NCBI GenBank assembly: GCA_021613535.1
Contig: CP075497.1
Location: 2,604,001 to 2,668,000, forward strand
From: Adineta vaga
Taxonomy: Eukaryota; Animalia; Rotifera
Reading direction: 5' to 3'
DNA length: 64,000 nt
The notes under the pieces: model-generated
What the model was told of the DNA's origin: nothing
Seen by the model: only the letters and a program-made list of their open reading frames with translations
Database searches by the model: none
Translations under genes and position numbers: made by a program
Shown here: piece by piece, positions 15,842-40,500 of the stretch
Layout: the number at the start of each line of letters is the position of its first letter
Numbering within the stretch: the first letter of the stretch is position 1

Positions 15842-17151
15842 AAAATTTTACGAATTTTATCCTAGTCATATCACTATATATGTGAAGCATTTCATGTCAT
15901 TTAATCTTTATTGTGTTCACTATTTAAACATGCTTCCAAACACTATTCTGATCAAATCTTTTTTTCTTCTAAAAATAAAACAACAGTGAATTATTCTTTT
16001 CTTATTCTGTTGTACTCATTGATATAATCAATTTTTCTTTGCATGTTTGTGTATAAACGATGGGAAACTCTTCTTCTCCTTCTTTTTGTGAGCATGTTAT
16101 TTGTCGTTGTTGTATAAAATCGTTCATAGCGAATAAATGTGTGTATATGGATTTTCTTCTTTTTCTTCTTCAATAAAGAAACGTACGAAATGAAAGAATT
16201 CTTTTTTATTATATTCCACATGCTATGTTATCTCTGATGAACATAAAGAAGAATTGGAAATATTTTTCTCTCATCGGTTCAGTCGTATTGAATCAGCATA
16301 TACACGTGATGTAATATACTATGTATGAAAAATCCTTCGTGTGCCGATACAAACGACTAAAAGAAAATTATTTCGTTCCGCTTAAAAATTCTTCACACGA
16401 ATTACGCTTAGTATGAGCTCGTGTTTATGTCATCTTTTTTTTCCTTTCTTTACATTCATACAAGAAATAAATAGAGAAAAGTATTACGCACCTAAGTTCA
16501 TTATTTTATATTCATAAGCAAAAAAAACAAAAATGCGACTAATATGGGCACACCAATAAGTCCTTTGATCCTTATTTGGAGGTGATCTATTTGTCTAGTG
16601 ACGCATGGTAATGGTAGATGGTATTGCTAAGATATCTAAGCATTTTACATAACTTGTCACTGTCTTTTATTGACTTTTTCTGACAATACAAGTTCAAAAC
16701 TAGCACTATGCTATGTCTATGAAGTAGAAGAAAATAAATCGAAATAAAGACTATTATATTTTCGTCAAAAGAACATTGCGATTATGGTCGTTAATGACTA
16801 ATTGGTTAGATAGGACGAAAAAGGCGATTAGGTGAATAATATGATTAATAGACAAAAAAATGATATTAAGTAGAAATTTAATGGTAACCAACCACATAGG
16901 TTATATTTACGCATGACTGAATGATTGTCATCAATACTAGATATTCGTATGTCCGATAAAGTGATGAAATTTTGTTGAGTGTGAAATAAGCGATACAAAA
17001 ATTGTTCGAGCGAAAGTGAACGAAACAATTGGTAAAGAACATTAAAATCATTCGAGAGTGTACATTGAAAAAAATATATAAATTTATTTTACTTTTCATT
17101 TGATCTATTCATTACATATTATACATAAAGAACGGTTGTGTTTTTATTCAA

Positions 17152-18827
17152 ATGAGTGACGATAAAGAAATGAAAATGGAAAGAAAAGGAAAATCTTCTG
17201 TCGAAAAACCTAAATTAAGTTTAATGAGTGGTATCGCATTATTAGTTGGATCAATTATTGGATCAGGAATTTTTATCTCACCACGTGGTGTTCTTCTTGG
17301 CACAGGTAATTATTTTCGTTATTTATGTATTCGAATTGCATCTTTCTTAGGTTCCTATGGTTTATCTGTTCTTGTATGGATTATTTGTGGATTAATTTGT
17401 ATACCAGGTTGTATGTGTTATGCAGAATTAGGTACAATGATTCATAGTTCAGGAGGAGATTATACATATATTAAAATGGCTTTTGGAGATTGGGCTGGTA
17501 AACACAATTGTCTTCTGATTGAAATCAAATGAATTCTACTTTCAATTGCTTTTAGGTTTTTTACGTGTATGGAGTGAAATATGTTGTGTACGTCCAGCGA
17601 TCATTGCCGTTTGTGCAATAACAGCATCAATTTATCTTCTTCAACCAATGTTTAGTCCATGTTCACCACCACATTATGCTGTACTTGCTCTTGCTTGTTT
17701 TTTCATTTTGACATTAACATTACTCAATCTATCATCTACTCGTGGATCAATTATTTGGCAAAATGGTACATTTTATACTAAAATAGTAGCATTATTTCTT
17801 CTGATTGGTCTCGGTATTTATCAATTAATACGAGGTCATTATGATACATTTATAGAACCATTCGCTAATACACAAACAAGTGTCAAAAAATTATCTATAG
17901 CATTCTATATTGGATTGTTTCCGTATTCAGGTTGGAATTATTTATCAAATGCAGTTGAAGAATTGAAAAATCCGGAAAAAAATTTCCCTATTGCTATTAT
18001 GTCTTCAATTGTTGCTAGTACGATACTCTATACACTTGCTTATAGTGCATATTTTACTGTATTAACTCCACATGATGTAATGACAGCTGATGCTGTTGCT
18101 GTTACTTTTGCAGAAAATATCTATCGGCCATTACGAATTCTCATGCCTTTGCTAGTATCGATCTCTGCTCTTGGTGGTCTCAATGGACGTATGAATATCA
18201 ATATGTTAATTTCAATCTCTTCATATTAAATTTCTCTTTCTAGAAATTTTTTCCATTGTACGTATGTTTTCCGTTGCTGGTCGAGATGGTCTTCTACCAA
18301 CAATTTCTGCTTTTCTTCATATTCAACGATTAACACCTGTTATTCCATGTCTTGTCGAAGGTCTACTTGGTAAATATAAGCATTAGATACTTACGAAATA
18401 AGTTTCATTTCATGAGTTGTTCATGTGTATTTATTTATCACATCTAGGAGTTCTTTATGTTCTTGTTGGTAATGCTGATCGTCTACTTGGATATTTAAGC
18501 TTTAGTACATGGCTAGTCTGTTTAAGTAGTGCAGTCAGTACACTTATCTTTCGTCGTACAATGCCTAATGCTCATCGTCCATTTCATGCTGGTGTCATTG
18601 CTCCAACAATATTCATCATTGTCATGGGTCTTCTTACACTCGTAAATATTATCTTTAATCCAATAGATATATTGGTCGGTATGCTAATTCTTGTTTCTGG
18701 TCTTCCAATCTATTGGTTATTTGTTTGGAAGCGACCAAAATCAGTAGACAAGTTTAGTGAAAGAATTACTATCTATTTACAGAAACTATTTCTTGTTGCA
18801 CCAGAGAATAATAAACAAGATGAGTGA
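17152..18827 (+). CDS. SLC7 L-type/heteromeric amino-acid transporter light chain
   Basis: VGSIIGSGIFISPRGVL, CYAELGTMIHSSGGDYTYI, YSGWNYLSNAVEELKNPEKNFP and GLPIYWLFV. The extracellular Cys in QPMFSPC is at the usual heavy-chain disulfide position. Confidence 0.93.
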
Positions 18828-32800: not shown

Positions 32801-35800
32801 TTAGTTAACATCAGAAAAATATCCTGATGGTCTCTATATTAAAGATGATCAAGTAACTAGTGTTATGGCACATCCCATTGTGAATTCTCAAGGAAAACTT
32901 CTTAGTAAATGAAATATTCTTCTGAATTTTAATTCAATCTATTTGAAAATTAGGTGTAGTGGAATTCTATCGAACTGATGGAATAACTCCATTTTCTGAT
33001 GAAGATGAAGAAGTAAGTTTCTTATTCATATGAGCATTTTTCGTCGTTGTCCAATATTGTGAAGTATTGGTACTAAAATAACCTAGCTTTTTTTTCTAAT
33101 TGTCTATGCAAAATGATCTGCATATTATGAAGGAAAACAAATCCTTGTTATATGATAAACCTCTTTTGAAGAATTTCGTGATGCTTCAGTCGTAATTAGT
33201 GTTTTCCAACAATTAATCAGCTTTATATATTTTAATTAAACTTATTCTTTTATTCAATGTAGTCAATAATTTCATTCTCTTTTGCTTCAGGAAATTGTAA
33301 AATGCGTGAATGAGCTTTTCACCCAAACATATTACGAGGTATTAAATATGCACATCCTTTCTTTTCTACATTGTTTGATTCTTATATGTGTATATCTGCT
33401 TGCTTCGATATAAATCTTTGGTTTTTTTTTTGATATGTCACGAACATAATTCAATTTCATAATGCATGAATAACTAGCTCGTTTCAATTCAATTTTTTTC
33501 ATCTTGTTGCTTCGAAGAAAAAAACACAATGACAGAAATTCTGTTTTATTCTATTCTTTAGCTTTATCATACAATGACACGAGAACGACGTTTGAACGAT
33601 TTTCTTTTAACTGTGACGAAATCAATTTTCCAAGAACTTGTTAGTATGGATGTTGTGATGTTGAAAATCATGGTAAGAAAAGAAATACATAAATATTCAA
33701 ATCTATTCGTATGTTTTCTTTTAGAGTTATGCGAAAAAGTTAGTCAATGCTGATCGTGCTTCATTATTTATGGTTGATTCAAGAACAAAAGAACTTTATG
33801 CACGCATCTTTGATATTGGACGTGAAGAACATGATATGCTTGATTCATCTGCTATTAATGATAATGATGGAGAAAAGCGTTCAGCATCGGATGAACGTCC
33901 TTGTATACGTTTTCCTATGGATAAAGGAATCGCTGGTTATGTAGCAACAACAAGAGAAACATTAAATATTCTTGATGCTTATAGTGATAGTCGATTTAAT
34001 CGGTAAAGAATGAAAAATAAAAAATTGTTTTGTTTAATTGAAATGTCTTTATGTAGAGATATTGATCAGAAAACAGGTTATAAAACGAAGACACTTTTAT
34101 GTATGCCAATTATGATTCAAGGAAATGTAATTGGTGTTGTTCAAATGGTCAATAAAAAAAATGGACATTTTACTAAAAGTGATGAGGAATCATTTGAAAC
34201 ATTTGCTGTTTATTGTGGACTTGGTATGTTGAACTACTGAGAAATGAGTCTTTTTCTCTTATGAGATATAATCAAATTTTTTCTTTTCCATGTCATTTAG
34301 CTCTTCATCATGCATCACTTTATGATCGTATTCGTCGTTCGGAACAAAAGTGTAAAGTATCACTTGAAGTTCTATCGTATCACGCATCATGTACTGATGA
34401 AGAATACGAACGAATGAAAGCTTGTTCACTTCCTGAAAACATTCCATATCTCGAACGATTTGAATACTCACCATGGGATGTAACGAATGATCTTAAACCA
34501 ACTTATGTTCTATTTATGTTTCTTGATCTTGCTAATGTTGATCCATTATATGCGTATCGGTAAAATTAACCCAAAGAATTTGTTTTTAATATTTATTTGT
34601 TCTGATTTTATTTAGATTTGATATTGAATGTTTAATGAGATTTATATTAACTGTACGAAGAAATTATCGAAATGTTCCATATCATAATTGGTCACATGCA
34701 TTCAGTGTAGCACATTCAATTTATACTGTGATAAAACAAACAAAACATCAATTTTCACCCAATGATGTATATTCGATTTAGAATTACATTTCATAAAAAA
34801 AAGAAAATGAAACTTTTCTTTTAGTGTATTGCTCTGTTTGTTGCTTGCCTTTGTCATGATCTTGATCATCGTGGTAAAACCAATGCTTTTATGGTCAAAA
34901 GTGCATCAGCTCTTGCTTCAATTTATACAACTTCAACAATGGAACGACATCATTTCAATCAAACAGTTACCATCCTTCAAGTAAAGAACACATTTTCCAT
35001 CATATTCATCAATTAAATTCGTATATTGTTTTTAGACTGAAAATTTGAATATCTTTAAACATTATTCTTCGAAAGAATATCGACAAATGTTAGATGAAAT
35101 TCGTCATTGTATATTAGCAACTGATTTAGCATTGTTTTTTGAAAATCGTCCAAAACTTGAACGTATTGTTGATATGACAGATTTTAATTGGCATAACAAA
35201 GAACATTTGTAAGTTATGAAATGAAACACATTGTCTTTCATGCCTTATTTTAAACAACAAACAAAAAATAATTTTATAATTTGATTTTCGAAATCTGCCG
35301 CAATAATCCCTTTGTTTTAATATTTTATTTATCATCCTTTGTCACTGATTGTATTTGTGTGGTGATAGTGCCTGTTTTTCTTGACCTTGATCCTTTTTAA
35401 TACCGTGTGTTTGTGTGCATTATATTGACACATAGTTAGCACAGATTTTGACACTTTGGAATGATAATATCAACAAAGAAAAACTATTCTTTGATTATTT
35501 ATTGCACACATATGTTTTCGATTTATATTAATTCACAAATTCTTTTCTCTGTAGGCTACATTTGATGGAGCTCAGTATGACCGCTGCGGATTTATGTTCT
35601 TCATATAAGCAATGGGACGTGCAGCGGTCGAATGTGAGCGTCATCATGGAAGAATTCTTCCAGCAGGTGATTGAAAATTTCATACCTTTCCACTGCTTTA
35701 TCTGTCTCTCTTTCTGTGTATTCATAATTCACGACAAGAAAGCAGCACTTACTTTTATAGATGAATAGATTTCTCCCAGTATAGACACGCACTATTATCA

Positions 35801-36843
35801 CCACCAAATACAATTCGAGCAAATTGGATGTAAAGAAGAAAAAAAACGAAGGGAGAGCGGCTAAGAATTATTTTTGAACGAGTTTTATTCGTAATTTTGA
35901 CGTTCGATTGTTTATTTTTCTTTTTCAATTTTTACTTCCAGTCGACGATTACAATCAATAGCAATGACATCTGCCGATTTATGTGCTATGTATAAACCAT
36001 GGCAAGTTCAACAAGAAGTTGTCAGTACAATTATGGACGAGTTTTGGGAAGAGGTGTGCTTTTTTTCTCTATGTATCTGTAATTGCTGCTTTCTTCTAAT
36101 CGATAGAATGAAAAAGAGAGAGAGAAAGATGCATCAATTCTTCTTTTTTTGCTTTTGAATTTGATTTTATATGTTAACTATATTCTTTTCATGCAGGGTG
36201 ATGAAGAAAAAAGTCAAGGTCTTCAACCACAATCATTAATGGATCGATCTCTTGCTCATGAATTACCAAAAAATCAGGTAAATCTCACTTCTTTTGTTCT
36301 TTGAACTAAAGATAAATTCGTGTTACATTCTATAAGGAAAAAAAAAGATCATATTTAGTTGTGTTTATCTTGGGACTAACAACAATGATAGAATAATTTT
36401 ATTCTCTTCCGTCAAATGACAAGGGATTAAAAAGTAGAATGAAATCTTTTAGTAATCAGATTAAGATTTTCTCGTACTATTCCATTGAGACATTCCATTT
36501 TCTTTCTCTTTTTTTCATTAATATCTAATAAATCTTTTTTATTTCAGGTGAACTTTATTAAAAGTATTTGTCTCCCATGTTATTCATTAATGGCACGTAT
36601 TCTGCCAGAAACAATCCCAATGCTCAACGGAGCGAAGTAAATTTCAAATGAATCTTTGACTTTTTCATTCTGCTTAATTCTTTGTCTTTATGTAGAAGTA
36701 ATCTTCAACGATGGCAAGAATTAGCCGATGAAACTTTACAAAAAACTCAAACGAATAGAACTGCTACTGCATCAACGGATGATATGTCCAAATCTTCTCT
36801 AATTTCTCCAGCTAACAATAACGGTCAGCCAGCATCATCGTGA
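26720..36843 (+). CDS. PDE10-like GAF-GAF cyclic nucleotide phosphodiesterase with alternative first exons and mutually exclusive catalytic exons
   Basis: The common exon from 31730 encodes [27 protein letters not shown] (PDE10 N-terminal motif). Two GAF domains ([36 protein letters not shown]). Catalytic motifs [39 protein letters not shown] and [12 protein letters not shown] at 36841-36843. Confidence 0.92.
28232..28295 (+). CDS. PDE alternative first exon 1b ([21 protein letters not shown])
   Basis: Perfect AG|gtaagt donor in phase 1; ends in a monopartite NLS-like motif. Confidence 0.7.
28503..28611 (+). CDS. PDE alternative first exon 1c ([36 protein letters not shown])
   Basis: GC-richer open stretch from an ATG (in-frame TAG just upstream) to a G|gttagt donor in phase 1. 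Confidence 0.55.
30810..30936 (+). CDS. PDE alternative first exon 1d ([13 protein letters not shown]...[17 protein letters not shown])
   Basis: G|gtatgt donor in phase 1; N-terminal Cys-Cys plus a basic cluster. Confidence 0.7.
35297..35861 (+). promoter_or_regulatory. Intronic imperfect inverted repeat (arms 35297-35377 and 35783-35861) enclosing PDE exon A; candidate splicing-regulatory RNA duplex
   Basis: Nested complementary blocks: gccgc/gcggc, tccctttgtttt/aaaacgaaggga, tttatcatcctttg/caaattggatgtaaa and attgtatttgtgtggtgatagtgc/gcactattatcaccaccaaatacaat. Confidence 0.75.
35555..35666 (+). CDS. PDE mutually exclusive catalytic exon A (112 nt)
   Basis: ctgtag acceptor and CAG|gtgatt donor, phase 2-0; encodes [37 protein letters not shown]. 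Confidence 0.85.
35942..36053 (+). CDS. PDE mutually exclusive catalytic exon B (112 nt)
   Basis: ttccag acceptor and GAG|gtgtgc donor, phase 2-0; encodes [37 protein letters not shown]. Confidence 0.88.
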
Positions 36844-37176
36844 TATGCTTTTCGTTTTCTTTTTCTCAATCGGTTTTTTTTTGCTACAAAAGAAATGAAA
36901 TATTTTGAAAAAAATGATGTTTGTGTGTATTTTATTCTTTTGTTGTTTTTGTGTTTATTTTTTTCCTTATTTTTTTTTCTTCTCTTCGTTTCGGTTTTTT
37001 TTTCTCTTTTTTTTTATATACACAAAACAATGATGATCTTAATATTTCTAACTGCATCATTCTCCAAAAATGAACGTTTTCTTTTATTTTCACATAGAGA
37101 CAAATGACAATAACGATACATCTTTGTTTTTATGAAAAAACACACAAACGCAAATGACTAAATACATATTATGTAT

Positions 37177-37209
<33 letters not shown>

Positions 37210-37530
37210 AAAAGAGCGACAAGAGGACAATAAACGATGAGAAATAAGATAGAGGACAATGTTTTGTTTTCTTTTCATCAAAGAATTACTGATATAATAA
37301 TAACAACAACAAAAACAAAACAAACAATGTTGTCTAGTATAAATTTGCTTCTTCTGTAAATATGTCAATATATGCGTATGTGTGTAATGAAGAGAGAGAG
37401 AAAGATATGTATTCGTGCGGAATTGGTCAGCGCGCGAAAGAGAGAAATGATGCTTAAAACATCAAACAAACAAGAAAGAAAAAAAGAAAGTTTAGAGGAA
37501 AAAAAACAAAACAAATAAATGAATGAATGT

Positions 37531-40500
37531 TCAGGATGATAAGGGTTCATCATTATCATCCGCATTTCTTGCTGCTGGAGGTGTTCGGAGATCTACAAGA
37601 CCTTTTTCACGTATTACTTTCAAGGCAGCTTGTTCAGCAGCACGAACAACATCTTCACTATGATCAACTAATGATATGATATTGACACCATCCCATTGAA
37701 CACCACATGAATTAAGTAATTCATGAACCTACAAAGAAAGAAATATACAAATCATTATTTGAATAAACTCTACCGAAAATGCATCTTTTGAATGCGGTTT
37801 TGCCTTAAAATTCATCGACGATAATGTAAGACGTATCTTTCTATTTGAGGTGCTAACTTATCATCTCTTCAGACAGAAAATAATCTTCTCAACATAAAAA
37901 ATGACATCTTCATATACTCTTCTACTTATTATTAGCTACGTTAGAGGATACAGTAAGACATATATCTGAATTGATGCTCAAGTTCATAGAGAAAAAACCA
38001 AAATATCATAGTAATCTTACATCACTGTCTGTAACAGGTATTTCCTGTGTTCCACCTGCTGTTGTTTCTAATAGCATTCGTACATCAAAACCAGCTGCTT
38101 GTTCATCGTAATGTATAGCTGGATGTTTTCCACGATAAAAAAGAATTCGAGCACGTTCGTTTGCTTCTCGCCAACTTAAACCTCGACCAACACGATGTGA
38201 TGATGTACTACTATTCAATGTTCGATCACCGTTGATAGATGTTGATAGATAATGTCCTGAATCATCATGACCATGTTTTGATGTTCCAAATGCACCTGCA
38301 CGTGGTGGTAATGAAACATACATTTCTTTAATAACTAAAGCTAAAAAGCCAAAAAAATAAAAAGTAAAGATGAGTTTCTCTCTCTCTCTCTGTCTAACTT
38401 ACGCTTTCCATCAAGTCGATCTCTCATCAATGTTTGTACTTCAGGTTTATCAATATCATCAAATTGATTTGTTGCATGTGCTTGTTCAATAACATCAACA
38501 ATTTGATCAATTAATTTTTCATGATTATGTTTAAAATCTTTCTTTAATTTTTCTTTAACATCATTATAATCTTTAAATTGACCAGTTTTTTGTCCTTCTA
38601 AATAATGAAATGTTTTATTAACATAACTTTCAATTTGATGTTCATTATATAAAGATTGATTATAATCTAATAATAAAGCTGTTATTGATGCAACAATTTT
38701 CTTTCGATTGCTTTTTAAATTTTGTCGTGCACGATCTGTTATTAATGATGAAACACGTCGTTTTCCATTGGTATTGATGATATTAATTGATGTGACATCT
38801 TGTTGAGCGGCATTGGGTGATTGTTGTAATAATAATAATCCATCTTTTTGTGCCTGTTTGATTAATTGAACTGCCCGATCACAAAGATCATGTGCTTTGG
38901 AAAATTCTCGTCTCAATTGAGAATTTAATTCATCCCATGTATAGATTAGATTCAAGGAAAGAAGATCTAATGCACGAGTGAGAATTTTACTTAATTCCTT
39001 ATTTTGTTTTTTGGTTATTTTCTTTTCTTTTAATTCATTATCAATTAAATATTGATTTAACCATGCTAAATGATTGGATTTTAATAAATTTTGTTCTTCA
39101 GTTGTTAATAAATTGACTCGATTCATTGTTGGATTATATAAATTAGCTGTTTGAGTTATATTTGAATCGAGAATATCAAGATTGGTTTTTTCATTCATTT
39201 GTGTTATATCACAATGATCAAATGTATCACGAATGATATCAACTGTGGGATCGACAAGATAGAATGTTTGTTTGTATTCAGTTTTTAAATCATTACGAAT
39301 TTGTTCATAAGAAAGTGTTTTGGGTTGAGTAACAAGTGTTAATGTTTTACGGATGATTTTTTCAACTTCTTTTGTATGTTCAGGAAATTGTCGAATTGCT
39401 GGTTGACTTGCTTGAATATGATCACGAAGAACAGTACCTAGTTCTTGACGATGTGTATTTAATTGTGAACGACGACGATCATCAAGTAATCCAGTATTTG
39501 TTATTGTTGTTGGAGTTGACGGTGGAACTTTTGGTTTCGATGCTTTTGATCGACCACAAGTTAAACAAGAATGTGTAGTTGATGATTGTTCTTTTGTTAT
39601 TTGAGGCTTTTCTCTAAAATGAATGAAGAAAAAGAATGAATGAAAAACTATTCTATTATTTATAACATACTCTGTTATGTCTTTGTTAAAATATGTAACG
39701 GTGTCAAATGTTTGTTTAGCCGGAAGACGTACCATCTAAAAAGAGATGAATAATTCATGAGAATATTTTAAAAACCATTAATCATAACTTACATCACGAA
39801 TAGCTAATGGAAATTCAGGTTTATCGAGATTATCTAGACCTTGTTTTTCAATTGTACAATAAAGTGATCGAACAACAGGATCGACAATAAATGCATCATT
39901 TTTATGTTCAACAATTAATTTTTGTTTCAATTCAGGATATGTTGCAACTTTTTTATCTTTAATCAAATCGATTGCATGTGTAAGAATCTTATCGAGAGAT
40001 TTATGATCCTTTTTCGCATCAAACTCATCGATTGATTTCGAAATTTCACCTTCTAAACATTTCTTTAAATCATTTTGTCGAAAGATTAATTTCGATCGTA
40101 ATTCATCATTTATACTGATTCTACGAGTAAAATCATGTCGTGAAAAACTACTTTCACGTTTTGGTAAATTCGTTGATTTTTCAACATGAATATCAGGCAT
40201 TGTTGATGATTTTGTTGTTATACTGGCGAGTGTATCACTACCTAAACCTGAAGTAATGGACGGATGTTGATTAAGATTTTCAATTGTTTGATTTGTTGAT
40301 GATGAATGAAGATGGGATGAGATTATTGCCTCAAGACCGCTATCTGAACGAGATTGAGTTGTGATTGATTCTCCATGTTTCAATGAAGATATATAGGAAT
40401 CACTTTTAGGTGGACCTGATAAATCCAGTTCAGGAATATCCAATGCTGGTGCTTTGATTTCAAATGATGAATGCTTCTTTAATTCACTGTGTGATTCCTA

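What the first reader, a model, noticed from the sequence alone, without database searches (positions are those of the whole stretch)
35297..35861. Nested long-range RNA duplex loops out exon A: a likely structural switch for the exon choice
Seen: the introns on either side of exon A are complementary in nested order. 35347-35377 pairs with 35783-35815 (nearly all of the 31 nt paired; small bulges, one mismatch). 35328-35343 pairs with 35817-35834, 35307-35318 with 35843-35854 (12 bp including one G-U), and 35297-35301 with 35857-35861. The G-U wobbles on the sense strand suggest selection at the RNA level. These introns (346 and 275 nt) are far longer than the ~55-nt norm. A local hairpin (tgtgtgca 35412-35419 / tgcacaca 35503-35510) sits just upstream of the exon A acceptor. 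Established: intronic pairings control mutually exclusive splicing in Dscam1, Mhc and 14-3-3. Inference: duplex formation favours B, and melting it (by an RNA-binding protein, temperature or stress) allows A.
Basis: partly seen in the sequence, partly recalled or inferred. Interest (0 to 1): 0.85.

Follow-up and report, generated by a model that had tools for sequence, protein, structure and literature searches.

The report
RNA bridges steering a rotifer exon choice
Matching sequences in the introns around two alternative exons of a bdelloid rotifer phosphodiesterase gene are real, unique in the genome and conserved in related rotifers, so they most likely fold the pre-mRNA to steer which exon is used, a mechanism proven so far only in a fruit-fly gene.

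Summary
Window 35294-35377 (intron 1) and 35783-35866 (intron 2) form a nested, imperfect duplex of about 64 bp around exon A. It is the strongest such complementarity in the 64-kb window (z about 11). Both arms are single copy in the 100.8-Mb genome, so it is not a MITE.

RNA contigs show that exons A and B (112 nt each, same PDEase_I segment) are both spliced in. B-joined forms appear in more runs.

Seven diverged orthologous loci from environmental bdelloids keep both arms at the same positions. The arm blocks are 61-90% identical, against about 40% for the rest of the introns. The arms pair in every locus, and each lineage's own arms pair better than arms swapped between lineages.

Column covariation is only suggestive.

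Elements just downstream of exon A (35693-35753) pair with intron 3 (36079-36130) and loop out exon B. This pairing occurs in nearly all 18 loci, including Rotaria.

The four-element, interleaved layout matches the experimentally proven bidirectional pairing of Drosophila srp, so this is a new member of a known kind. Function is inferred, not tested. This scan noted a similar layout in this genome's NTE gene.

The parts
35036..35208 (+). Upstream constitutive exon of the GAF-phosphodiesterase gene (PDEase_I profile positions 87-140)
   Evidence: RNA joints 34980>35036 and 35208>35555 / 35208>35942; Pfam
35209..35554 (+). Intron 1 (346 nt, GT..AG)
   Evidence: Joint 35208>35555 in X1 and X3
35294..35377 (+). 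Upstream docking arm (Ud), the left arm of the exon-A loop. It has an outer block aucugccgc and an inner block ccuuugu..guggugauagugccugu.
   Evidence: Duplex of -71.7 kcal/mol with 35783-35866. Blocks are 84-90% identical among 7 loci against 42% for the rest of the intron. Single copy in the genome.
35409..35434 (+). Small local hairpin (gugugug / cacacac type) just 3' of the left arm
   Evidence: RNAalifold consensus columns 278-284/298-304, one compensatory pair
35555..35666 (+). Exon A (112 nt), the first of two mutually exclusive exons. It is itself a stable hairpin (gaccgcugc / gcagcgguc).
   Evidence: Joints 35208>35555 and 35666>36197; PDEase_I profile positions 149-183; exon fold of -45 kcal/mol, conserved in 15 loci
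35667..35941 (+). Intron 2 (275 nt, GT..AG) between exons A and B
   Evidence: Joint 35666>35942 in one X1 contig; borders conserved in all loci
35693..35753 (+). Upstream selector (Us), the left arm of the exon-B loop. It consists of a CU-rich block at 35697-35715 and aagaaagcagcacuuac at 35736-35752.
   Evidence: the repeat finder I1 (17 nt, 94%) and I8. Duplex with intron 3 in all 15 distinct loci drawn. Blocks are 77-94% identical among long-intron loci.
35783..35866 (+). Downstream selector (Ds), the right arm of the exon-A loop. It ends about 75 nt before the exon B acceptor.
   Evidence: conserved blocks gcacuaucaccac and agcggcu; single copy in the genome
35942..36053 (+). Exon B (112 nt), the second mutually exclusive exon
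   Evidence: Joint 35208>35942 in X1, X3 and X5; PDEase_I profile positions 149-182
36054..36196 (+). Intron 3 (143 nt, GT..AG)
   Evidence: X5 contig joins 36051/36053 to 36195/36197; borders
36079..36130 (+). Downstream docking arm (Dd), the right arm of the exon-B loop. It consists of guaauugcugcuuucuu at 36079-36095 and a GA-rich block at 36113-36130.
   Evidence: the repeat finder I1 and I8; blocks 75-76% identical against 38% for the rest of the intron
36197..36277 (+). Downstream constitutive exon (GDEEK.., PDEase_I profile positions 184-209)
   Evidence: Joints 35666>36197 and 36277>36548; Pfam

Best explanation
The stretch is one half of a two-helix, srp-type 'bidirectional RNA pairing' device. 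The device steers mutually exclusive splicing of two duplicated 112-nt exons in the catalytic domain of a GAF-phosphodiesterase gene of a bdelloid rotifer.

Helix A pairs Ud (35294-35377, intron 1) with Ds (35783-35866, intron 2). It loops out exon A and brings the exon B acceptor next to the upstream donor, which favours B. Helix B pairs Us (35693-35753, intron 2) with Dd (36079-36130, intron 3). It loops out exon B and brings the exon A donor next to the downstream acceptor, which favours A.

The four elements are interleaved (Ud < Us < Ds < Dd), so the two helices are alternative or pseudoknotted conformers. Their relative strength would set the A/B ratio. In this gene copy helix A is unusually long and is transcribed first, so B should be the default.

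What is shown:
- the complementarity;
- its uniqueness in the genome;
- its conservation and retention across lineages;
- the use of both exons.

What is inferred: that the helices form in vivo, and the direction of their effect on exon choice. That direction is taken by analogy with the mutational work on Drosophila srp.
For: 1. Real and non-random.
- Fold z is -4.9.
- The strand-neutral alignment scores 65 against a background of 24 +/- 3.7, maximum 47.
- z is 11.1 against dinucleotide shuffles.

2. Not a repeat family. Each arm finds only itself in the 100.8-Mb genome at E <= 10.

3. Both exons are spliced.
- up>A: depth 20.5 in X1 and 12.5 in X3.
- up>B: 60.3 in X1, 45.8 in X3 and 8.3 in X5.
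- A>downstream exon: X3.
- All with GT..AG borders.
- A and B cover the same Pfam profile positions.
- At 112 nt each, taking both or neither shifts the reading frame.

4. Positional conservation.
- Seven diverged loci (window, L005, L006, L007, L014, L015, L023/24) keep the arm blocks at 61-90% identity.
- The remaining intron sequence is 40-42% identical.
- RNAalifold, run without guidance, predicts both the outer and the inner helix.
- Every locus has its own duplex of -53 to -76 kcal/mol, and I1 x I2 z is 2.6-11.

5. Co-evolution.
- Cognate arm pairs beat swapped pairs: sum -429 against -388, with 2 of 5040 permutations as low.
- Examples are GCCGC/GCGGC changing to GUCGC/GCGAC in L014, a C/C mismatch becoming U-A in L005, and gauag becoming ggugg kept as G-U in L005.

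6. The second helix.
- 17 nt at 94% plus 16 nt at 88% in the window.
- It can be drawn in all 15 distinct loci, including Rotaria and the short-intron copies.
- By I2 x I3 shuffles it is significant in about 13 of 18 loci.
- Cognate sum is -638 against -543, with 19 of 200000 permutations as low.

7. Alternative conformers. The MFE of 35209-36196 (-241.5) contains helix A only. Blocking Ud gives -205.8 with helix B. Blocking both gives -173.5.

8. The same four-element layout was proven by disruptive and compensatory mutations in Drosophila srp (PMC4691838).
Against: - There is no experiment or structure probing for this gene.
- Column-wise covariation is weak because the arms vary little. There are 6 compensatory pairs against 3.6 expected from column shuffles, and 134 of 2000 shuffles reach that number.
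- Strand asymmetry of G-U is absent and the antisense strand folds equally well. The sequence alone therefore cannot separate RNA-level selection from DNA-level homogenisation of an inverted repeat.
- Helix A is not significant in most short-intron relatives. The genome's own ohnolog has z of only 2.0 (14 of 300 shuffles reach its score) and lacks homologous arms. Helix A is therefore lineage-specific.
- Contig depths are a poor measure of isoform ratio.
- One X1 contig joins A directly to B, so exclusivity is leaky.
Confidence: 0.7

Rival explanations
1. A selectively neutral DNA inverted duplication in the two introns. It would be kept similar by occasional gene conversion between the arms and would have no effect on splicing.
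For: Both strands fold equally well. There is no G-U strand bias. Column covariation is not significant. The genome's own ohnolog works without homologous arms.
Against: The arms stay at exon-like identity (61-90%) in seven lineages whose introns are otherwise about 40% identical. That is purifying selection, not neutrality. The arms are only about 85% alike within a locus and carry many indels, which argues against recent conversion. The arms also sit in a four-element layout that matches a proven splicing device.
Confidence: 0.08
2. The conserved blocks are binding sites for splicing regulators (intronic enhancers or silencers). Their mutual complementarity would be incidental or secondary.
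For: The left inner block (ccucuguugcuaauuguguuugu) is more conserved than its partner needs it to be, and its partner varies between lineages. The CU-rich and GA-rich blocks resemble common protein-binding motifs.
Against: Four separate blocks would have to be complementary in nested order by chance in every lineage. Cognate arms pair better than swapped arms. Lineage-specific insertions in one arm are matched in the other, in the window and in L023.
Confidence: 0.08
3. The flanking inverted repeat mainly promotes back-splicing of exon A into a 112-nt circular RNA, as Alu pairs do in mammals. It would not mainly choose between A and B.
For: The geometry is the classic one for circular RNA biogenesis: complementary arms in both flanking introns of one exon.
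Against: No backward joint 35666>35555 was reported, although assembled contigs have little power to show one. A 112-nt exon is short for efficient circularisation. The partner helix around exon B and the srp parallel fit exon choice better. The two roles are not mutually exclusive.
Confidence: 0.07
4. The arms are terminal inverted repeats of a MITE or foldback transposon, or two opposed copies of a dispersed repeat.
For: Long imperfect inverted repeats are typical of such elements. A true foldback insertion sits in intron 1 of the Rotaria ortholog.
Against: Each arm matches only itself in the whole genome. The arms enclose an ancestral exon that is also present in the ohnolog and in Rotaria. 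They are positionally conserved across lineages.
Confidence: 0.02

Closest known systems
Bidirectional RNA pairing in Drosophila serpent (srp) exons 4.1/4.2 (Yue et al. 2016, PMC4691838)
   Same: - There are two tandem mutually exclusive exons.
[quoted passage not shown]
- Ud-Ds loops out the first exon and Us-Dd loops out the second.
- The elements are interleaved, so a pseudoknot is possible.
- In srp, the outcome follows the relative pairing strength.
   Different: - The phylum differs (Rotifera, not Arthropoda) and the gene differs (GAF-phosphodiesterase catalytic domain, not a GATA factor).
- The upstream helix here is much longer (about 64 bp, nested, with bulges).
- It is lineage-specific, while the downstream helix is the widely conserved one.
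- No mutational proof exists here.
Docking site / selector competition in Dscam1 exon 6 and 14-3-3 xi
   Same: Long-range intronic base pairing brings one alternative exon next to a constitutive exon and excludes the others.
   Different: Those systems use one docking site that competes for many selectors. Here each docking site has a single selector, and the competition is between two different helices. A shared-docking variant (Us2 pairing either with the exon A acceptor tract or with Dd) is only hinted at.
Competing long-range RNA structures at vertebrate mutually exclusive exons
   Same: Intronic complementarity around duplicated mutually exclusive exons sets their ratio.
   Different: The genes and the arrangement of the helices differ.
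Interleaved intronic pairings at the NTE/sws mutually exclusive exons of the same genome (scan note s1-508280)
   Different: Another gene on other DNA. I did not check that note.

Membership tests
srp-type bidirectional RNA pairing at a two-exon mutually exclusive cluster | Two tandem, homologous exons of which exactly one enters the productive mRNA | tested here: met
   Both exons map to PDEase_I profile positions 149-183. Both are 112 nt, so taking both or neither shifts the frame. Joints up>A, up>B and A>downstream are seen. One leaky A>B contig is also seen.
srp-type bidirectional RNA pairing at a two-exon mutually exclusive cluster | Four conserved intronic elements: one upstream, two between the exons, one downstream | tested here: met
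   Conserved blocks are 61-94% identical against 38-42% for the rest of the introns in 7 loci.
srp-type bidirectional RNA pairing at a two-exon mutually exclusive cluster | Ud pairs with Ds and Us pairs with Dd in all species surveyed | tested here: met
   Within the long-intron lineage both pairings are found. In short-intron relatives only Us-Dd is clearly significant.
srp-type bidirectional RNA pairing at a two-exon mutually exclusive cluster | Compensatory substitutions keep the helices | tested here: inconclusive
   Six pairs have double changes, and cognate arms pair better than swapped arms (p about 4e-4). The column-shuffle control is not significant, 134 of 2000.
srp-type bidirectional RNA pairing at a two-exon mutually exclusive cluster | Disruptive mutations shift exon choice and compensatory mutations restore it | not testable with these tools
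   This needs a minigene or edited animals.
Dscam-type single docking site with competing selectors | One docking sequence is complementary to a selector next to each alternative exon | tested here: not met
   Ud and Dd are different sequences, each with one partner. Only a 6-bp alternative partner of Us2 at the exon A acceptor tract is predicted.
MITE / foldback transposon | Dispersed copies of the inverted-repeat sequence in the genome | tested here: not met
   Each arm finds only itself at E <= 10.
Inverted-repeat-driven circular RNA locus | A back-splice junction joins the exon's donor to its own acceptor | tested here: inconclusive
   No backward joint appears in four runs of assembled contigs. 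Contigs are ill suited to show one.

The most novel reading that the evidence does not exclude
The two ancient gene copies (ohnologs) of this phosphodiesterase may have split the A and B isoforms between them by changing only intronic RNA helices. The window copy grew a very strong upstream helix and makes mostly B. The chromosome-3 copy lost that helix, kept the downstream helix and makes mostly A.

In addition, the element aagaaagcagca may toggle between masking the exon A acceptor tract and pairing with intron 3. Together with the conserved hairpin inside exon A, this would give a three-part switch.

If so, bdelloid rotifers would offer a natural series of helix strengths, in the long-intron and short-intron copies of many species, that links RNA structure to isoform ratio.
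Probability: 0.2. Interest if true: 0.75.

Novelty: new member of a known kind. Interest (0 to 1): 0.55.

Why it matters
Structure-guided mutually exclusive splicing has been proven mainly in arthropod genes, with a few vertebrate cases. A clear, conserved example in a bdelloid rotifer would show that the bidirectional-pairing solution arises repeatedly after tandem exon duplication, in a third animal lineage and with very short normal introns. This scan noted a second example in the same genome.

The exons swapped here encode the segment of the phosphodiesterase catalytic domain that carries a metal-binding aspartate and part of the substrate pocket. The helices would therefore tune cyclic-nucleotide signalling.

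The many environmental bdelloid contigs, and the paired ohnologs with strong and weak upstream helices, give a ready comparative series for testing how helix strength sets isoform ratio.

Tried and rejected
- **RNAduplex background.** Computing it over the whole window timed out twice. I replaced it with a fast local-alignment statistic.
- **G-U wobble asymmetry as proof of sense-strand selection.** Rejected: 24 sense against 19 antisense.
- **Column-shuffle covariation on 32 pairs.** Not significant. I did not use the count of structure pairs, because it would have needed a dot-bracket string of about 1000 characters typed into the call.
- **Homologous arms in the genome's own ohnolog.** Absent. 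Its introns are 137 and 132 nt and its own I1 x I2 complementarity is weak (fold z -2.45; z 2.0).
- **Short-intron loci.** A cognate-versus-swapped test looked significant (4 of 40320), but per-locus shuffles mostly are not. I do not claim helix A for those loci.
- **MITE reading.** Rejected.
- **Rfam.** Only a chance-level match.
- **A-to-I editing.** No A>G cluster in the arms in the few intron-retaining RNA contigs. This has low power.
- **Literature.** Searches for rotifer or phosphodiesterase examples found none.
- **Anchor contigs.** Two lacked the gene (L041, L043).
- **Spliced protein model.** The exons were searched one by one by reference.
Full report
**Setting**

The window is G000:C6:2604001-2668000 of a 100.8-Mb genome in six contigs. 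The genome has about 30% G+C and introns of 55-59 nt. I take it for a bdelloid rotifer, and other notes of this scan name it Adineta vaga.

The finding lies in a + strand gene whose exons match Pfam PDEase_I. The Rotaria ortholog is annotated with two GAF domains plus PDEase_I. Each exon was searched by reference on its own. Read laying was given 2,901 letters.

The minimum-energy fold of 35209-35941 contains the whole stem: -184.6 kcal/mol against a shuffle mean of -146.6, z -4.9.

A strand-neutral local alignment of intron 1 with the reverse complement of intron 2 scores 65. For 1545 equally spaced segment pairs of the same window, the mean is 24, the sd 3.7 and the maximum 47. Against dinucleotide shuffles z is 11.1.

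The core has 63 matches, 4 G-U, 7 transversions and 12 gap columns. The arms alone give -71.7 kcal/mol.

**The exons are truly alternative**

Exon A (35555-35666) and exon B (35942-36053) are both 112 nt. Both align to PDEase_I profile positions 149-183.

RNA-derived contigs of three runs give these GT..AG joints.

| Joint | Meaning | Contig depth |
|---|---|---|
| 35208>35555 | A taken | X1 20.5; X3 12.5 |
| 35208>35942 | A skipped, B taken | X1 60.3; X3 45.8; X5 8.3 |
| 35666>36197 | A to the next exon | X3 15.9 |
| 35666>35942 | A and B both taken, out of frame | X1 19.7 |

Contig depth is a poor measure of level. Still, B-joined forms are seen in more runs and at higher depth. A more diverged contig in X1, which fits the chromosome-3 ohnolog, joins its exon A' to the downstream exon at depth 99.7. 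A spliced contig of a relative (L020) also carries up-A-down.

**Relatives**

I used the neighbouring 464-aa ORF (38341-39735, minus strand) as a synteny anchor. I also ran one metagenome scan with an alignment of exon A peptides. Together these fetched more than 25 bdelloid loci, among them Rotaria sp. Silwood2.

All complete loci keep exon A, exon B, their 112-nt length and the GT..AG borders. They fall into two groups.

- The long-intron group has introns 1 and 2 of 316-415 and 266-344 nt. It holds the window, L005, L006, L007, L013/14, L015, L021/22 and L023-25.
- The short-intron group has introns 1 and 2 of 77-260 and 104-169 nt. It includes the genome's own ohnolog on contig 3 (L004: 137 and 132 nt) and the later-fetched L040, L042 and L044/45.
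- Rotaria (L010) fits neither group: its intron 1 is 1159 nt because of an insertion, and its intron 2 is 224 nt.

**Conservation of the arms**

In the seven distinct long-intron loci the introns are almost unalignable, at 40-42% identity. The arm blocks stand out against this.

| Arm block | Pairwise identity |
|---|---|
| Outer left | 90% |
| Inner left | 84% |
| Inner right | 71% |
| Outer right | 61% |

RNAalifold on the seven full regions, without any hint, predicts both the outer helix (gccgcu.cu..cccc with gggg..ag.agcggc) and the inner helix (guggugauagugc with gcacuaucaccac). Each locus forms its own duplex of -53 to -76 kcal/mol. Each also has I1 x I2 complementarity above shuffles, z 2.6 to 11.

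**Co-evolution of the arms**

Arms of the same locus pair better than arms exchanged between loci. The cognate sum is -429 against a permutation mean of -388, and only 2 of 5040 permutations are as low. Examples of kept pairing:

- GCCGC/GCGGC becomes GUCGC/GCGAC in L014.
- The window's C/C mismatch is a U-A pair in L005.
- gauag becomes ggugg in L005 and is held by two G-U pairs.
- Lineage-specific insertions in one arm are matched in the other, in the window and in L023.

**Limits of the evidence**

The arms vary little, so column-wise covariation is only suggestive. Of 32 pairs, 89% of cells are paired, against 31-60% when the partner is slid. Six pairs show double changes against 3.6 expected from column shuffles, and 134 of 2000 shuffles reach that number.

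There are 24 G-U pairs in sense duplexes against 19 in antisense duplexes, and the antisense strand folds as well as the sense strand. That the relevant molecule is the pre-mRNA rests on the gene being transcribed from the + strand, not on wobble pairs.

**The missing half**

The repeat finder already listed two further pairings.

- 35736-35752 (aagaaagcagcacuuac, intron 2) pairs with 36079-36095 (intron 3): 17 nt, 94%.
- 35700-35715 (CU-rich) pairs with 36115-36130 (GA-rich): 16 nt, 88%.

They are nested and loop out exon B. These blocks are 75-94% identical in the long-intron loci, against 38-40% for the rest of the introns.

A CU-rich/GA-rich helix, often with a non-repetitive core such as cucuugcucu/agagcaagag, can be drawn in all 15 distinct loci compared. 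These include the short-intron copies, the ohnolog and Rotaria. Cognate partners beat swapped ones: -638 against -543 +/- 26, with 19 of 200000 permutations as low. Part of that is a class effect. I2 x I3 complementarity is significant against shuffles in about 13 of the 18 loci tested.

By contrast, I1 x I2 complementarity is mostly not significant in the short-intron loci, and the own ohnolog has z of 2.0. The downstream helix is therefore the old, general one. The upstream helix, which is the finding, is a strong, lineage-specific addition, and the window has the longest version.

**Mechanism**

The order of the elements is Ud (35294-35377), Us (35693-35753), Ds (35783-35866), Dd (36079-36130). 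The helices Ud-Ds and Us-Dd are thus interleaved.

Nested folding of 35209-36196 gives these energies.

| Constraint | MFE (kcal/mol) | Helices present |
|---|---|---|
| None | -241.5 | Helix A (64 pairs), no helix B |
| Ud blocked | -205.8 | Helix B (45 pairs) |
| Ud and Dd blocked | -173.5 | Neither |

This is the layout of Drosophila srp. There, four conserved intronic elements form two pairings, and disruptive and compensatory mutations showed three things (PMC4691838).

- The upstream pairing directs inclusion of the distal exon.
- The downstream pairing directs inclusion of the proximal exon.
- Exon choice follows the relative pairing strength.

By that analogy, helix A favours B and helix B favours A. 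Both arms of helix A are transcribed before exon B is, and helix A is the stronger helix here. This agrees with B being the commoner form in the contigs. These last steps are inference.

RNAalifold also pairs the pyrimidine tract before exon A (gcuuuu) with the aagaaagc of Us. All six pairs are essentially invariant, and the helix is present in the MFE together with helix A. If real, Us would mask the exon A acceptor in the B-choosing state and release it when it pairs with Dd. I rate that as a lead only.

**Rivals**

- A neutral inverted duplication does not fit the exon-like conservation of the arms.
- Protein-binding sites alone do not explain nested complementarity that co-varies by lineage.
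- A circular RNA role cannot be excluded with contigs and could coexist with exon choice.

**Novelty**

I found no paper on RNA-pairing control of mutually exclusive exons in rotifers or in a phosphodiesterase gene. The mechanism itself is known, and tandem duplication is thought to generate it readily (PMC6071210).

This scan has already noted a similar interleaved pairing in the NTE gene of the same genome (s1-508280). I did not check that note. The finding is therefore a well-supported new member of a known kind. Its interest lies in the phylum, the conserved comparative series and the contrast between the two ohnologs.

Noticed in passing
window 35562-35660 (inside exon A): Exon A folds into a long, stable hairpin (gaccgcugc/gcagcgguc plus gaugg.gcuca/ugagc.ucauc). 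Its MFE is -45 kcal/mol in the window and -29 to -46 in all 15 loci, against -16 to -30 for exon B. Paired changes appear in L009 and L018: a V-to-I change or a gua codon on one side is matched by synonymous auc>auu/aua on the other. It may weaken exon A or bring its splice sites together.
   Followed up: partly
window 35540-35549 with 35734-35741: The pyrimidine tract before the exon A acceptor can pair with the aagaaagc of the Us element. This is a 6-bp helix, essentially invariant in 7 loci, and it is present in the MFE together with helix A. It may mask the exon A acceptor.
   Followed up: partly
window 35666>35942 joint: One RNA contig of run X1 (depth 19.7) joins exon A directly to exon B. 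Taking both exons adds 112 nt and shifts the frame, so exclusivity is leaky and such transcripts are presumably degraded.
   Followed up: no
L010, minus strand, about 16390-17360 (intron 1 of the Rotaria ortholog): An insertion of about 970 nt with long terminal inverted repeats, flanked by TATATA, sits in intron 1 and makes it 1159 nt long. It looks like a foldback or MITE-type element and is unrelated to the arms of the window.
   Followed up: no
window 38341-39735, minus strand: A 464-aa single-exon ORF without any Pfam domain on record is conserved at 52-88% identity in many bdelloid contigs. It is syntenic with the phosphodiesterase gene in Adineta-like contigs and in Rotaria. One source labels a relative as eIF-2 alpha, which looks like a mislabel.
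   Followed up: no
L044 minus-strand PDE locus, intron 3 (and L045): This short-intron relative keeps the Dd block (cugcugcuuucuucuaaug) and the Ds core (cacuaucacca). It lacks the Us2 partner aagaaagcagca in intron 2. The elements are therefore older than the long-intron lineage and have been lost piecemeal.
   Followed up: no
window 36278-36547: The next intron downstream is also long (270 nt against the 55-59 nt norm; joint). I did not examine it for conserved elements.
   Followed up: no
window 36680-37420: Low-complexity pyrimidine-rich and purine-rich tracts at the 3' end of the gene give the only background complementarity score (91, with wobble) above that of the finding. It looks compositional.
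   Followed up: no
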